DNA from: Neoconidiobolus thromboides FSU 785
Lineage: Eukaryota > Fungi > Entomophthoromycota
NCBI GenBank assembly: GCA_025603075.1
Contig: MU626295.1
Location: 62,001 to 126,000 of the forward strand
DNA length: 64,000 nucleotides
Reading direction: 5' to 3'
This document shows, piece by piece, positions 618-54,055 of the stretch; the first letter of the stretch is position 1; the number at the start of each line of letters is the position of its first letter. The notes under the pieces are model-generated. The model was not told the DNA's origin, did not search any database, and saw only the letters and a list, made by a program, of their open reading frames with translations. The translations under genes were made by a program, and so were the position numbers.

Positions 618-690
618 GCTCCCTTGGCCCAATGGATAAGGCATCAGACTTCTAATCTGAGGATTGCGGGTTCGAGTCCCGCAGGGAGTT
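618..690 (+). tRNA. tRNA-Arg (anticodon UCU), intronless
   Basis: Acceptor stem GCTCCCT/AGGGAGT, D-arm GCCCAATGGATAAGGC, anticodon arm TCAGA-CTTCTAA-TCTGA, T-arm GCGGG-TTCGAGT-CCCGC. A T6 Pol III terminator lies at 701-706. Confidence 0.95.
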
Positions 691-1247: not shown

Positions 1248-4180
1248 ATGAAATCCATCTTACAAAAAGAATTCGATCGTTTTATATATGAAAGTAAAGC
1301 GTATTCCATTGATAAACCGAAGGCAAAGAGTAATCCACTTGGTAATTTCAATTACAAATCCGATATTGAGAAACAAATCATTCATGGTAAAGAGCATTAT
1401 TATGACTCTTTATTAATGAATATCGATTTAACTAAAATTGATTTAAAAGATAAAAATTTAAATATCAATGGTAATTTAATCTTATTCTCAATAGATATTC
1501 TTACTAAGATTGATTTTTTATTCCATTAGCTGCTTATTTTCCGATTGAGAATAATGATATGAATACGATAAACGTAAATAAAAAATCCAATTATCGATTT
1601 GAAGTTGTGAGTTCTTTAGGTAGAGGTGCTTTTGGGGCTACTTTTTCAGCATTAGATAAAAGTTTTAATCCACCTATACAAGTGGCTATTAAAGTACAAA
1701 TTGATCCAAAGCAAAATTATATTGGAAAAAATGTAAGTAATTAAAACAAACAAAATTAAGATAATGTTCCATTTTTAACTTGATATTTAATTTAGGAAGC
1801 AAGTGCTATTAATTGGTTATCAAGAAAGATCAATGGACGTAAGTCCTCAGGTTCCCAAAAAATTGTCAATTTAAATTTCACCTTTTATCAACAAGGGCGT
1901 TTATGTTTAGTATTAGAATTATTAGAAAATTTTCCCATATTTGAATATACATTTCCAAAAGGTTATAAAGAAAGTAAAGTAGAATGGCGACCTATAAAGA
2001 ATTGTAAAGAAAAAATTAAAAGAATTAAAAGGCTAACTAAAATTGCTTTTCAATTAATTACTGCTCTATTACATCTTCAATCTCAAGGTGTCATTCACTC
2101 AGATATTAAACCAGATAATATATTGAGAAGTAGGTCCAAACAGACTTCTCTTAGATTATGTGATTTTGGTAATGCTATTATTTTAAATCAAATTGATAAT
2201 TATAAAAAAAGTTTTGATGTTCAAACCTTACCTTACAGAGCCCCTGAAGTAAGTTATTTTATAACAATAATAATATTTTCATATTCAATATAAAATTCAT
2301 AGCTATTAGCCCAAATTAGAATTGAAAAAGCAATTGATATGTGGTCAGTTGGTAAGTTTAATAAAATAAATAACATCAAATCTAATTTATTTATTTATTA
2401 ATATATATTAATATATATTATTATATATTTATTTTATTAATTATTAGGAATTATATTATGTACAGCAATTACTGGTAAATTACCTTTTTATTCTAGTGAT
2501 CAAGATAGTTTAGAAAGAATTAATAAATGTCTTGGACCTTTTCCATATTCTTATTATCATACCTCTACTATATTAAAATCTGATTTAATGGATGATACAC
2601 ATATGATTGGAAGGTAAACCTTAAAAAAAATAGTTATACTAAAAAAATTAATAAATATAAAATATAGTAAACGACCTTTATTAACAAGTCAAGAAAGATA
2701 TAAAAATTTAGGACAATTATTAGGATTAGATTGTACAGAACCAATTATTCAATTTTTGGATGGATTATTACAGTTAGATCCTAACAAAAGATTTACACCT
2801 TTAAAAGCATTATCTCATCCCTTTTTATCGGATTTAATGGGCATTGATTTAAGATATATTATTTCTTTACAAACTAATTTTTCACCAAATTCAAAACATC
2901 AATTAAATTCATCTCAATCTATTCAATTAAATCATTCAAATCAACAGCAGCAAGCTATTAGTAGATCTAACAATATTAAAAGTTTAAGTGGAAATAGTAT
3001 ACATAATTTAAGTATTAGTAATTTAACTATGAACAATAATCAACAGTATTTGAATAATTTTAATGGAAGAAGTATGATTAATAATAACAAAGAATTATTT
3101 TTAAAAGAAAAACAAATTAAATTACATAGTTCAAATCAATTTATTGATAAAGCAAAGATTAATTTAATAAAGAATAATATTGTCAATATAGATAAAGAAA
3201 ATATAAAAGAAAAGAAAATAATCAATAATAAGGAAATAAAAATAAGGGTTAATAATGAACGAACTGAATTAGAAAAACAGATGAATGAAGCTATTTATAA
3301 TGAAACTAAACAAATTAATAATAATAATAATAATAATAACAATAATAATAATATAGATAAAGATCAATACACAAATAATAATAATAATTTAACTAAAACA
3401 AATTCTACTAATAATATGAGAGTTAAATTGAAAAGAGATATTCAATATCAATTAGAAAATAATGGAGATAAAGAATATAAAGAAGAAATGGAAGTTAAAG
3501 TTAAAAGAGAAAAATTAAGTAATGAGAATGGGAGGAATAATAGTACTATAAAGTTAGCCAAAGAAATCAAAACAAATAATAATAATAACAATAATAAAAT
3601 TAAGGAAAGTTCAAATACATTAAAATCATTACAATTTTATGATAAAAAAGTTAAAGAAAATACATCAAATTATGAGTTGAAGTTAAAAGAGAATCTAAAT
3701 TATGATTTAAAATTAAAAGAGAAGTATGATAAAGATTATAATAAAAAGATAAATAATGAAAAGAATAATGAATTAAATAATGATGAAGATATTAATATAA
3801 CATCAATAACTACTACAGCTACAATCACTAGTCAACCAGTAAAAATCCCTAAAATAATTACTAAATCAAGTAAGCCTCGAGTTAAAAATATAAAAGAAAA
3901 ATCAGTAATTGAATTATTAAAAGAAGAAAAGAAACAATTGAATTCAATTCTTCAACCAATAAGAACAAAGAATTCAAATCAATTAAATATTCAAGCTAAT
4001 AAAGTACAATATCAAACAGTAATGAATCATATTAATCATACTATAGAGGAAGATAAAGATAAAGATAAAGATAAAAATCGAAATCAAATAAAAACAAATA
4101 AAAAGTATTTTGATTTTGATAAATTAAATACATTATTTCCTTTGGATGATGAAGAAGAAGTAGATGTTGTTGAACTTTAA
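1248..4180 (+). CDS. Divergent CMGC (DYRK/PRP4/HIPK-like) Ser/Thr kinase with long Asn/Lys-rich C-terminal tail; multi-exon
   Basis: GT-AG introns at 1471-1529, 1733-1795 and three more join LGRGAFG, VAIK, HSDIKPDN, LCDFG, QTLPYRAPE, IDMWSVG and LDPNKRFTPLKALSHPF in frame. Ends at the stop of ORF 2756-4180. Confidence 0.85.
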
Positions 4181-4457: not shown

Positions 4458-5399
4458 ATGTATACTTTATTATCTGGGTTATATCAAAAATATAATCAAA
4501 AAGAAATGTATTCTATATTAATAATTGGATTAGATAATGCAGGAAAAACAGTAAGTTGAAAATATTTAGCTTTATTTAATTAAATTATAAATATAAATAT
4601 AAATTAAAGAAATAGAAACAAATTAATAAAAGAAATCAATTGACTAATGAGATTTAATTTTTAAATAGACGTTATTAGAAAAAATTAAACAACAATATTT
4701 AAATCAAATACCATTACCACCCGAGAAAATAGCACCCACCGTTGGTTTAAATAGTAAGTTTGATTTTAAAAAATAGAATTAAAATTTAATTCATAATTAT
4801 TTATTATTTAACTAAATATTAATTAACGTTTTTATCTTTATTTTTATTTATTTCTATATGATTAGTGGCTAAAATTCAATATGAAAAGAACAGTATTATA
4901 AATTTTTGGGATTTAGGTGGACAAAGTGATTTACAAAATATATGGAAAAATTATTATTCAGAATGTCATGGTATTTGTTTTGTTATTGATGCTACAGATA
5001 AAGAAAGATTAGAACAATGTAAATTAGTATTTGGTAAATTTATTATTTATTATTTATTATTTATTATTTATTATTTATTATTTATTATTATAGAAAAATT
5101 AGTACTAGATGATAGAATTCAAGGAGTACCTATTGTAATGTTAGCTAATAAACAAGATATAACTGGAAAATCATTATCAGTAGAAAGTATTAAAGAAATT
5201 TTTAATAAAATTGCTATTAAATTAGAAGCTAGTGATTCTAAAGTATTACCTATTTCAGCATTAACTGGGTAAACTAGTATTTAAATCTTTCAATTAATTA
5301 TTTTATTTGAATTCTAGATTAGGTGTTGGAGATGCAATTGATTGGTTATGTAGTCGAATGATTTTAAATAAATTAGAAAGACCACCTGTATTAAAGTAA
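4458..5399 (+). CDS. ARL3: Arf-like GTPase Arl3/ARFRP1; 5 exons
   Basis: MYTLLSGLY N-terminus, GLDNAGKT, PTVGLN, WDLGGQ and ANKQD motifs. GT-AG introns. Ends RPPVLK* at 5397-5399. Confidence 0.9.
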
Positions 5400-39959: not shown

Positions 39960-41213
39960 TTATTTTAAGCTCAAACCTTTGATATATTTATCATGGGTCT
40001 CAACTAAAATGGGTAAAAACACCATTTCAATTTCGCCTAAAGCTGGATTTTCACTCTCTAAATATATATGTTTATAACCATCTGATTCAGTCGGATAAAC
40101 AAACCAAACTTCTTTTTTTCTTGTGTTTAAAAGGTTAGCGATGACTAACTGATGTCCATATTGTTTTAAAGATTGTCTAGCTTTAGGGATTAGTAACTCA
40201 GGGTCAGTTTCTAATTTAAAAGAAACGATGTATGCTTTAGGCGCCCATTGATGTACTAACGGTTTAAGGAATTTAGGTACTTTAGACATTAATATTTGTA
40301 AATCTCCGGAGTTAGATTGTATTTTATGTTCTGACTAGATATGAATGTTAAATTAATAAATAACATATAAGATTACATAAGTCATATATTATGGTAATGT
40401 TGAAATATATACAATAAAAAAAAAATACCATTGCTTTAGGGTGTATAAAAAAATCTGAAACTGCAGCAGCTAAATAAAACAATGCTCTTTCTTTCAGTTT
40501 ATCTAAAGCTTTTGAAACAAACGTCAAAAGGTAAAGATAGTCGGTAACTGTGACAAAGGTGATTGATAATAACGTTCCTTCTTTTTTAGTCTAAACTTTA
40601 AATAAATAAACAAGTAGTATTATGAACTTATTTACCTTTTGGTATTTAATTAATACCTCTTTCATTTCAGAATCATATCTTGAGTCAGCTAAAATTTACA
40701 TCACTTCAGCATATTTTGTTTATAATTTTTAATTAATACCTTCAATACTACCATACTCGTTATTGAAATTCAAGTAATCTAAAAAGCAATTAGTAGAATG
40801 AGAGAAATGTCTAGAGTAAGGTTGTAAAGAGAATTGACGGTGCATAAAAATAACACAATAATCATTTTCTAAGAAATATGTATAAAAGGTTAAACATAAT
40901 AACTTTTTACAAACTAATAAGTTAAAAGTAAAAAAGGATATTCAGCAGAAGTAGCCCCACGAGTACCAGCAGAAAAATTATCGATAAATCGAACAGTGTT
41001 ATTTTCTAAAGGTACTGTTGTACCACCACTCTTAATTGATTAAATATTCCTTTTGAGTATAAAAAAAGAATCACTTACAGTAACTAAAGCTATCTTTTTA
41101 TCTTTATCACTCCATAATTTTATAAATTCATTGATTTTGGCTTGAGCTTCTTCGAAATTCGTTGGTGGGCTATGTAATCTTAAATAATCTTCTGGGTCCA
41201 AAATTTCACTCAT
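39960..41213 (-). CDS. CAB2: Phosphopantothenate-cysteine ligase (PPCS); includes one AT-AC intron
   Basis: [54 protein letters not shown] and [24 protein letters not shown]. Confidence 0.93.
40880..40941 (-). other. U12-type (minor spliceosome) AT-AC intron, 62 nt
   Basis: Minus-strand intron ATATCCTTTTTT...ATGTTTAACCTTTTATAC. Its removal restores the conserved ATSAE|YFL. Confidence 0.88.
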
Positions 41214-52999: not shown

Positions 53000-54055
53000 C
53001 ATAAGCTATATTCAATAGTACCATTAACATTAGCCTCATCAAAACTAGATTCTTTTAATAATTTTAAAATAATAGGATTTAGAAATACGATGTGGATGCT
53101 TTGAGTATTTGATATTATTAGAATTACTCTCAGTAATTCTTTTGGAACACTATTAACATATATCCTTTAACATTGATAATTTTAAAAAATTATTAACCGT
53201 GGTCTTACAAAAACTAAACTTACCCAAGGAAATGGCATTACTACCTTCAATTATATTATTATTTGTTTTTAAAAAAGCACTATAATTAGCAATCAATTCT
53301 ACACTTTTGAATTTTCTAAGATAATAATTGAAGTGTCTTTTACTAAGTGTTTTAAAATCAAATATTTTAAGTCTAAATAGGAAACAAAATTTACATTTAA
53401 AGCAAACAAACTTGAGTAGAAGTTACGTTGATTATTAAATCTAATCATTATAAATTGGTGAGCTCTTCTTTTATTATATTTAAACCATCAATATTAAGAT
53501 TTCAAAGAGGGTCTAATTTAAGTGATTTTAGCTTGTTTGGATTTAAATACTCGATAAGATCCTTTAAATCAATATCATCACTTAAAACACCCAAATCTTC
53601 AATTTAGTTTGAATGACTTTGAAATGCACTTGATAACTTAAAAACACAGGCATTTAGTACATTTATATTTATTTTCTTTAATATTGGCAATTGAATTTCA
53701 ATCTTAGGTTTACTCAAAAATGACAATAATAAATTACCATCAATATAAATAACGTGTTAAATTTGAGCAATGGTTTATATATTAATAGTATTACAATATA
53801 TAGTTAAGTGTTTCATCCTTCCTCTACTCTTTAAAAAGAGCCTTTATTGAATTTTTTCAAAACTATTAAATTAAGCATCATTATTTTTTTTGAATTCACG
53901 TTTGTTGTAAATTGAATACATTAATTTATGTTGGATGGCTTTGTTTATAATATGGGAAATACGTCTATTTAATGAGATTAAACCAAAATACCTCTTCATT
54001 TTCATCAGCTTAAACACAATAAATATCATCAGGTAATTAGTTAACCACATTTCAT
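53000..54055 (-). pseudogene. Decayed F-box/LRR-like gene remnant
   Basis: Broken frames contain N*LPDDIYCV* (54022-54036), LISLNRRISHII and L*NLNIDGL, with many stops and frameshifts. Confidence 0.3.

What the first reader, a model, noticed from the sequence alone, without database searches (positions are those of the whole stretch)
40880..40941. U12-type AT-AC intron in CAB2 implies a working minor spliceosome
Seen: the only way to join ATSAE to YFLEND in frame is a 62-nt intron that starts ATATCCTTT (canonical U12 donor) and ends TAC, with TTTAAC about 10 nt upstream of the end (a U12-like branch site). Every other intron I traced in the window is GT-AG. Established: the minor spliceosome is absent from Dikarya but retained in some early-diverging fungi. 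Inference: this genome keeps U11/U12/U4atac/U6atac, and CoA synthesis may be rate-limited by minor splicing. Automated annotation probably mis-models this gene.
Basis: partly seen in the sequence, partly recalled or inferred. Interest (0 to 1): 0.75.

Follow-up and report, generated by a model that had tools for sequence, protein, structure and literature searches.

The report
Minor-spliceosome AT-AC intron in fungal PPCS
The coenzyme-A biosynthesis gene PPCS/CAB2 of the fungus Neoconidiobolus thromboides has a genuine 62-base intron of the rare minor-spliceosome (U12, AT-AC) type. The public gene model mis-splices it, but introns of this kind are already known in such fungi, so it is a solid, fairly ordinary example.

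Summary
On the minus strand, 40941-40880 is a 62-nt intron that starts ATATCCTTT and ends AC. It has TGTTTAAC nine bases before its end.

- **Only colinear junction.** Of 34 in-frame, stop-free GT-AG, GC-AG or AT-AC junctions, only this one keeps the protein colinear with homologues (yeast Cab2 residues 114|115|116).
- **Single copy.** The gene is the only PPCS (DFP-domain) locus in the 24.6-Mb assembly.
- **snRNAs present.** The genome encodes U11 (65 bits), U6atac, U12 and U4atac. The U4atac and U6atac candidates pair through compensatory changes.
- **Other AT-AC introns.** At least 12 other sites with AT-AC U12 signals have open reading frames in matching phase on both sides.
- **Public model is wrong.** The NCBI protein (N. 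thromboides FSU 785, 305 aa) uses a GT-AG intron at 40966-40869. That deletes 12 near-invariant residues ([12 protein letters not shown]).
- **Position is ancient.** Thirty metagenome PPCS contigs have a U12 donor at the same codon and phase: 28 animal-like with a GT donor (20 seen whole, ending AG) and 2 fungus-like AT-AC. Three fungal protein models read into it.

The idea that minor splicing rate-limits CoA synthesis is untested. This scan has already reported U12 AT-AC introns in other genes of this genome (HBS1, RAB2, CLP1, GMF and others).

Verdict: a new member of a known kind.

The parts
41079..41213 (-). PPCS/CAB2 exon 1 (ATG at 41213; 45 codons)
   Evidence: Reading. 100% identical to residues 1-45 of the NCBI N. 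thromboides protein P0270.
41031..41078 (-). Intron 1, GT-AG (GTAAGT...AG), 48 nt
   Evidence: The junction agrees with P0270.
40942..41030 (-). Exon 2 ([11 protein letters not shown]...GTRGATSA plus GA of the Glu codon)
   Evidence: aligns to yeast Cab2 residues 86-114, E = 9e-13.
40880..40941 (-). U12-type AT-AC intron, 62 nt, phase 2
   Evidence: It is the only junction colinear with homologues.
40933..40941 (-). U12 5' splice site ATATCCTTT (followed by TTT)
   Evidence: It is complementary to the 5' end AAAAAGGG of the genome's U11.
40889..40896 (-). Branch-site-like TGTTTAAC, with 9 nt between it and the 3' terminal AC
   Evidence: It matches the TCCTTAAC consensus at 6 of 8 positions. 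The spacing is the same as in other AT-AC introns of this genome.
40740..40879 (-). Exon 3 (A of the Glu codon, then [21 protein letters not shown]...)
   Evidence: aligns to Cab2 residues 117-154, E = 3e-10.
40689..40739 (-). Intron 3, GT-AG, 51 nt
   Evidence: Agrees with P0270.
40636..40688 (-). Exon 4
   Evidence: 17 residues identical to P0270.
40591..40635 (-). Intron 4, GT-AG, 45 nt
40429..40590 (-). Exon 5 (54 codons)
40335..40428 (-). Intron 5, GT-AG, 94 nt
39960..40334 (-). Exon 6 (124 codons plus stop). It carries the DFP domain match.
   Evidence: PF04127, 29.5 bits against a cut-off of 22. One search shows it is the only DFP locus in the genome.
40869..40966 (-). Intron of the public (NCBI) gene model: GT-AG, 98 nt, donor G|GTACTC. 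It removes 36 coding bases ([12 protein letters not shown]).
   Evidence: Deduced from P0270 against the exons and listed among the alternatives.

Best explanation
Window 40941-40880 (minus strand) is a U12-type AT-AC intron in the single-copy phosphopantothenate-cysteine ligase gene (PPCS/CAB2) of Neoconidiobolus thromboides FSU 785.

Inferred mechanism, from established knowledge of minor splicing:
- U11 pairs through its 5' end AAAAAGGG with the donor ATATCCTTTTT.
- U12 pairs through GUAAGGA with the branch region TGTTTAAC, 10 nt from the 3' end.
- The U4atac/U6atac.U5 tri-snRNP then joins, and the intron is cut out between GCTGA| and |ATATTTC.

The result is a 317-codon reading frame with the conserved G-x-R-G-x-x-S-A-E-x-F-L motif intact.

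Shown here: the signals, the homology-fixed junction, the four snRNA genes, other AT-AC introns in the genome, and conservation of the intron position. Inferred: actual excision in RNA and which spliceosome carries it out.
For: - **Junction fixed by homology.** Exon 2 ends at Cab2 residue 114 and exon 3 starts at 116, with the split Glu at 115. The best homologues found (14 listed) are contiguous in the same way. It is the only colinear solution among 34 in-frame alternatives.
- **Conserved motif.** The 12 residues that only this junction preserves include G.RG..SAE, found in 225 of 280 full-length-like homologues. Most of the remainder differ only at the Ala.
- **Single copy.** Only one DFP/PPCS locus exists in the 24.6-Mb assembly, so it must yield a working enzyme.
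- **snRNAs.** U11 scores 65.4 bits (gathering score 39), U6atac 33.6 (33), U12 34.7 with E = 3e-4, and U4atac 40.9 with E = 1e-4. U4atac and U6atac form stems I and II with compensatory changes relative to the Rfam consensus.
- **Other U12 signals in the genome.** RTATCCTT + N20-50 + TCCTTAAC gives 12 hits, against 0 for the backwards control and 4 with a scrambled branch site. At least 12 further AT-AC sites have open reading frames in matching phase on both sides; two of these genes are recognisable as HBS1 and RAB2.
- **Conserved position.** Thirty metagenome PPCS contigs carry RTATCCTT at the same codon and phase. Twenty-two hold the whole intron: 20 are GT-AG and 2 AT-AC, and most of the 20 have a U12-like branch site 10-14 nt from the 3' end. 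Annotated PPCS proteins of Basidiobolus meristosporus, Glomus cerebriforme and Cetraspora pellucida carry YPF directly after SAE, the translation of (A)TATCCTTT.
Against:
- The branch site TGTTTAAC is the weakest among the AT-AC introns seen in this genome.
- U12 and U4atac score below their Rfam gathering scores.
- The U6atac candidate lacks the canonical AAGGA 5'-splice-site box and has GGC where AGC is expected.
- Minor-specific proteins were not clearly found.
Confidence: 0.9

Rival explanations
1. The public gene model is right. A major-spliceosome GT-AG intron (40966-40869, 98 nt) is removed, giving a 305-aa protein without [12 protein letters not shown].
For: It is the deposited NCBI model (P0270). 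It is in frame and stop-free. The acceptor TTTCTTAG is good, and TTTAAC lies about 20 nt upstream, where it could serve as a U2 branch site.
Against: It deletes 12 residues that are near-invariant in PPCS from yeast, animals and other fungi. Those residues are nevertheless encoded in frame and flanked exactly by U12 signals. The donor GTACTC is poor compared with the GTAAGT, GTATTA, GTAAAT and GTATTT donors of the gene's other introns. The same intron position is U12-type in 30 other PPCS genes. It could still exist as a minor aberrant isoform.
Confidence: 0.04
2. The AT-AC intron is real but is removed by the major (U2-type) spliceosome, as happens for rare U2-type AT-AC introns.
For: U2-type AT-AC introns exist (established knowledge). 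The branch site here is degenerate.
Against: The donor ATATCCTTTTT is the full U12 consensus and matches the 5' end of U11. There is no U2-type ATAAGT-like donor. The branch-to-3' distance of 10 nt and the missing polypyrimidine tract and AG are typical of U12 introns. Orthologous introns elsewhere are U12-type.
Confidence: 0.04
3. The gene is a decaying pseudogene, or the segment is retained, so that the reading frame stops at the in-frame TAG 24 nt into the segment.
For: Read straight through, the frame gives [11 protein letters not shown] and then a stop.
Against: It is the only PPCS locus in the genome. All six exons are open and 48-53% identical to homologues over their full length. The other four introns have clean GT-AG sites.
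Confidence: 0.02

Closest known systems
U12-type (minor-spliceosome) AT-AC introns of early-diverging fungi, e.g. Basidiobolus meristosporus and Rhizophagus irregularis (Larue & Roy 2023, PMC10639083)
   Same: Donor ATATCCTT, a branch site related to TCCTTAAC about 10 nt from a terminal AC, and no polypyrimidine tract. The host genome is a non-Dikarya fungus with minor snRNAs.
   Different: The species (N. thromboides) and the gene (PPCS) are not named in that paper's main text or in its one supplementary file held here. The branch site is degenerate (TGTTTAAC).
Other U12 AT-AC introns already reported by this scan in the same genome (HBS1, RAB2, cyclophilin, syntaxin-6, lipoate ligase, CLP1, GMF)
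   Same: Same genome, same signals, similar length (62-85 nt mostly). Several are likewise mis-modelled in the public annotation. I re-found the HBS1 and RAB2 sites independently.
   Different: A different gene. Here the mis-model removes a conserved 12-residue motif of an essential enzyme, and no RNA evidence could be obtained.
GT-AG U12-type intron at the same codon of animal-like PPCS genes (metagenome contigs L070-L099)
   Same: Identical position and phase (GA| in the Glu codon of S-A-E), a U12 donor xTATCCTT, and a branch site 10-14 nt from the 3' end.
   Different: GT-AG rather than AT-AC termini, and much longer (112-1,222 nt). The nearest named homologues are mollusc and annelid proteins.

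Membership tests
U12-type (minor) intron, AT-AC subtype | 5' splice site /ATATCCTT(T) | tested here: met
   ATATCCTTTTTT at 40941-40930.
U12-type (minor) intron, AT-AC subtype | Branch site resembling TTCCTTAAC about 10-15 nt from the 3' splice site, with no need for a polypyrimidine tract | tested here: met
   TGTTTAAC (6 of 8 matches to TCCTTAAC), with the second A 10 nt from the 3' end. It is weaker than the TCCTTAAC, TCTTTAAC and CCCTTAAC sites of other introns in this genome.
U12-type (minor) intron, AT-AC subtype | 3' terminal AC at a junction that restores the reading frame | tested here: met
   The intron ends ...TATAC|ATATTTC. It is the only homologue-colinear junction of 34.
U12-type (minor) intron, AT-AC subtype | Host genome encodes U11, U12, U4atac and U6atac | tested here: met
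   U11 scores 65.4 bits and U6atac 33.6 bits, at or above their gathering scores. U12 (34.7) and U4atac (40.9) are below theirs, with E <= 3e-4. U4atac and U6atac pair with compensatory changes. The U6atac is atypical.
U12-type (minor) intron, AT-AC subtype | Host genome encodes minor-spliceosome-specific proteins (65K, 48K, 59K, 35K, 31K, 25K, 20K) | tested here: inconclusive
   PF05253 (48K) and PF16021 (59K) gave no hits. Six-frame exon-wise searches are insensitive, and the PF16021 control rang nowhere. One candidate 25K ubiquitin-like exon scores 21 bits against a cut-off of 22.8, and its best PDB hits are SNRNP25 at E about 1. 65K, 35K, 31K and 20K were not searched.
U12-type (minor) intron, AT-AC subtype | Excised from RNA at exactly these sites, dependent on the minor spliceosome | not testable with these tools
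No RNA-derived N. thromboides PPCS protein was among the hits.
U12-type (minor) intron, AT-AC subtype | Orthologous introns at the same position are U12-type (supporting, not defining) | tested here: met
   Thirty metagenome PPCS contigs have RTATCCTT at the same codon and phase. Three fungal protein models show YPF read-through.
Phosphopantothenate-cysteine ligase (PPCS / Cab2, Pfam DFP PF04127) | DFP domain and full-length colinearity with characterised PPCS | tested here: met
   Exon 6 matches PF04127 at 29.5 bits (cut-off 22). Exons 2 and 3 match yeast Cab2 and human PPCS structures. All exons are colinear with homologues. Exons were searched separately; the joined protein was never submitted.

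The most novel reading that the evidence does not exclude
The minor spliceosome of this fungus may have an atypical catalytic RNA.

- The only U6atac locus found (contig 1, 41699-41843) has GGC where the near-universal AGC triad sits.
- It has GUUGA where the AAGGA box that pairs with the 5' splice site normally lies.
- Its partner U4atac carries the matching U-to-C change in stem I, so the pair appears to have co-evolved rather than decayed.

Separately, the PPCS intron looks like an ancient opisthokont minor intron that is AT-AC in fungi and GT-AG in animals. I found no paper linking PPCS to minor introns.
Probability: 0.4. Interest if true: 0.55.

Novelty: new member of a known kind. Interest (0 to 1): 0.3.

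Why it matters
- **It corrects a public gene model.** The deposited protein of an essential CoA-pathway enzyme lacks a 12-residue conserved motif because the annotation pipeline forced a GT-AG intron. PPCS models of three other early-diverging fungi show the same kind of error.
- **It adds to the evidence for minor splicing in Entomophthoromycotina.** The case is well supported and the position is conserved. The same intron position holds a U12-type intron in animal-like and fungal PPCS genes, with different terminal dinucleotides, which is useful material for studying subtype switching.
- **It does not change what is known** about the distribution of the minor spliceosome.

Tried and rejected
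1. **Motif frequency as evidence.** RTATCCTT is at chance level in the window. ATATCCTTTT is three times as common as its backwards control genome-wide (451 against 151). However, only 1-2 of 20 sampled sites look like introns, so I did not use the excess to estimate the number of minor introns.
2. **A second candidate in the window** (ATATCCTTT at 53160, plus strand). There is no coding context, so I rejected it.
3. **Pfam searches for U11-48K and PDCD7.** No hits, which is uninformative.
4. **First large protein search with the yeast-like P0018.** It returned only Saccharomycotina and not the window's own protein. An alignment of P0007 with separate exon rows then succeeded. MAFFT had misplaced short exons in two earlier alignments.
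5. **Fetching genomic loci of orthologues.** I used a metagenome DNA-pattern scan instead.
6. **Literature.** No paper links PPCS to minor or U12 introns. No paper found links Conidiobolus with U12 splicing: the three papers holding both words are on unrelated subjects. The one supplementary file held for PMC10639083 has no Conidiobolus entry.
7. **Middle exon of the 25K candidate.** It gave no Pfam signal on its own. The protein-atlas look-up gave only generic ubiquitin-like leads scoring below 0.9.

The joined (spliced) protein was never submitted to any search. Exons were searched one by one, by reference.

Full report
**What is there.** The finding lies in a minus-strand gene. I read six exons: 41213-41079, 41030-40942, 40879-40740, 40688-40636, 40590-40429 and 40334-39960. 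Together they make 954 nt, or 317 codons plus a stop. Four introns are ordinary GT-AG. The second, 40941-40880, starts ATATCCTTTTTT and ends TATAC. TGTTTAAC lies at 40896-40889, nine bases before the end. Read straight through, the frame runs [11 protein letters not shown] and then stops.

**Is the junction right?** Exons were searched one by one, by reference. The joined protein was never submitted to any tool.
- Exon 2 aligns to yeast Cab2 (6ai8_A) residues 86-114, identical at 28 of 29 positions. Exon 3 aligns from residue 117, with its first Tyr at 116. The split Glu codon (GA|A) is residue 115.
- Exon 6 carries the DFP domain, PF04127, at 29.5 bits against a cut-off of 22.
- Against 355 homologues, all exons are colinear. 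In the 14 best, exon 3 starts exactly two residues after exon 2 ends.
- I enumerated all in-frame, stop-free GT-AG, GC-AG and AT-AC pairs in the region and found 34. Only 40941-40880 preserves [18 protein letters not shown].
- The motif RTATCCTT is not rare in this AT-rich DNA: 10 found against 8.25 expected. Its weight comes from sitting exactly where homology demands a splice.

**Organism and public model.** I searched with a profile of a close homologue (P0007) plus separate exon rows. This returned P0270, NCBI 'putative phosphopantothenoylcysteine synthetase [Neoconidiobolus thromboides FSU 785]', 305 aa.
- P0270 is identical to my exons 1, 4, 5 and 6. It also matches most of exons 2 and 3, but lacks [12 protein letters not shown].
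- The public model therefore uses a GT-AG intron at 40966-40869, with the poor donor G|GTACTC and the acceptor TTCTTAG|A.
- The deleted residues include G.RG..SAE, present in 225 of 280 full-length-like homologues. Most of the remainder differ only at the Ala.
- PF04127 hits only this locus in the 24.6-Mb assembly. The gene is single-copy and must be spliced productively.

**Minor spliceosome in the genome.**
- Rfam models find one locus each for the four minor snRNAs:

| snRNA | Bits | Gathering score | E-value |
|---|---|---|---|
| U11 | 65.4 | 39 | 1.4e-10 |
| U6atac | 33.6 | 33 | 1.3e-5 |
| U12 | 34.7 | 53 | 3e-4 |
| U4atac | 40.9 | 53 | 1e-4 |

- U11 begins AAAAAGGGC, complementary to CCTTTTT of the donor. 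U12 keeps GUAAGGA, the branch-site-pairing box.
- U4atac and U6atac co-fold into the expected stem II, 5' stem-loop and stem I arrangement at -43.7 kcal/mol.
- Stem I (UGCCAAU with AUUGGCA) and stem II (CCGUCUCU with AGGGACGG) both differ from the Rfam consensus through compensatory changes.
- Oddly, this puts GGC where the AGC triad of U6atac normally sits. The 5'-splice-site-pairing box reads GUUGA rather than AAGGA. I could not test whether that is lineage-wide.
- Three of the four genes have a similar motif (TATCCCAC, AAACCCAC) 50-75 nt upstream, and U4atac has a weaker version.
- Minor-specific proteins remain open. PF05253 and PF16021 gave nothing. A half ubiquitin-like domain on contig 2 is a candidate 25K protein, at 21 bits against a cut-off of 22.8; its best PDB hits are SNRNP25 at E about 1.

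**Other minor introns in this genome.**
- The strict pattern RTATCCTT + N20-50 + TCCTTAAC occurs 12 times. The backwards control gives 0 and a scrambled branch site gives 4.
- A looser pattern gives 38 against 28.
- I tested for open reading frames in compatible phase on both sides. At least 12 further AT-AC sites pass; two of these genes are recognisable as HBS1 and RAB2.
- Their branch sites are TCCTTAAC, TCTTTAAC, TTCTTAAC, CTCTTAAC or CCCTTAAC, 9-16 nt from the AC. The PPCS branch site is the weakest of the set.
- Earlier notes of this scan report U12 AT-AC introns in HBS1, RAB2, cyclophilin, syntaxin-6, lipoate ligase, CLP1 and GMF of the same genome. I re-found the HBS1 and RAB2 sites on my own.
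- The threefold excess of ATATCCTTTT over its reverse is mostly not introns, so I did not use it.

**Conservation of the position.**
- I scanned the metagenome collection for the codons of N-F-S-x-G-x-R-G-x-x-S-[AT] followed by GA and RTATCCTT. This returned 30 contigs, and every one is a PPCS gene with the donor at the same codon and phase.
- Twenty-two contigs hold the whole intron.
- Twenty of these are GT-AG, 112-1,222 nt long. Most have a branch site such as TTCTTAAC or CCTTCAC 10-14 nt before the AG. Their nearest named homologues are a scallop and a leech protein.
- Two are AT-AC, on low-GC contigs. Their proteins are closest to Glomeromycotina (L074, 99 nt) and to chytrids (L080, 217 nt).
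- None of these contigs looks human.
- Annotated PPCS proteins of Basidiobolus meristosporus, Glomus cerebriforme and Cetraspora pellucida carry YPF right after SAE, with a disturbed sequence following. YPF is the translation of (A)TATCCTTT, so those models appear to read into the same intron. That last point is an inference from proteins, not from DNA.

**What is not shown.**
- The idea that minor splicing limits CoA synthesis has no support here.
- Literature (PMC10639083) already documents minor introns in Zoopagomycota and Glomeromycotina and their absence from Dikarya.
- I found no paper that links PPCS to minor introns.

**Verdict.** It is a new member of a known kind and one of many already noted in this genome. 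It adds a gene-model correction and evidence that the intron position is ancient.

Noticed in passing
L002:1501-1645 (G000 contig 1, 41699-41843) and L004:1501-1649, minus strand (contig 25, 43214-43362): The U6atac candidate has GGC where the AGC triad sits and GUUGA in place of the AAGGA 5'-splice-site box. U4atac has the compensating U-to-C in stem I (UGCCAAU pairs with AUUGGCA). The two appear to be a co-evolved pair, but no canonical second U6atac could be excluded.
   Followed up: partly
P0282 (Basidiobolus meristosporus), P0322 (Glomus cerebriforme), P0353 (Cetraspora pellucida): The public PPCS proteins carry YPF directly after SAE, followed by aberrant or missing sequence. This looks like annotation reading into an ATATCCTTT donor at the same position, so these gene models are probably wrong too.
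   Followed up: partly
G000: C6:41807, C28:118959, C73:74957, C214:23207, C264:13946, C1:68424, C51:45678, C59:4195, C60:8170, C63:5358, C87:45540, C93:29200: At least 12 further sites with AT-AC U12 signals have open reading frames in matching phase on both sides; two of these genes are recognisable as HBS1 and RAB2. Of the 12 strict-pattern hits, 10 have an AT donor. The two with a GT donor did not look like introns, so the AT-AC subtype may predominate here.
   Followed up: partly
L001:1438-1452, L002:1424-1436, L003 about 1690-1700 (minus), L004 about 1695-1705 (minus): A similar motif (TATCCCAC or AAACCCAC, weaker ATCTCCA) lies 50-75 nt upstream of the four minor snRNA genes. It may be a proximal sequence element.
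   Followed up: no
whole genome G000: ATATCCTTTT occurs 451 times against 151 for the backwards control. Only 1-2 of 20 sampled sites look like introns, so the excess is unexplained.
   Followed up: partly
L068:1398-1653 (G000 contig 2, about 5020-5280): A candidate U11/U12-25K (SNRNP25) gene. Its last exon matches the C-terminal half of Pfam Ubiquitin_4 at 21 bits, and its best PDB hits are SNRNP25. A possible upstream exon reads ...KIKDLKNII... The case is weak.
   Followed up: partly
window 618-690 (+): A tRNA gene (Rfam RF00005, 64.9 bits). It was the only Rfam gathering-level hit in the window.
   Followed up: no
L070-L099 (metagenome contigs): Animal-like PPCS genes, nearest to mollusc and annelid proteins, carry a GT-AG U12-type intron of 112-1,222 nt at the same codon. 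Several contigs are near-duplicates from different samples.
   Followed up: partly
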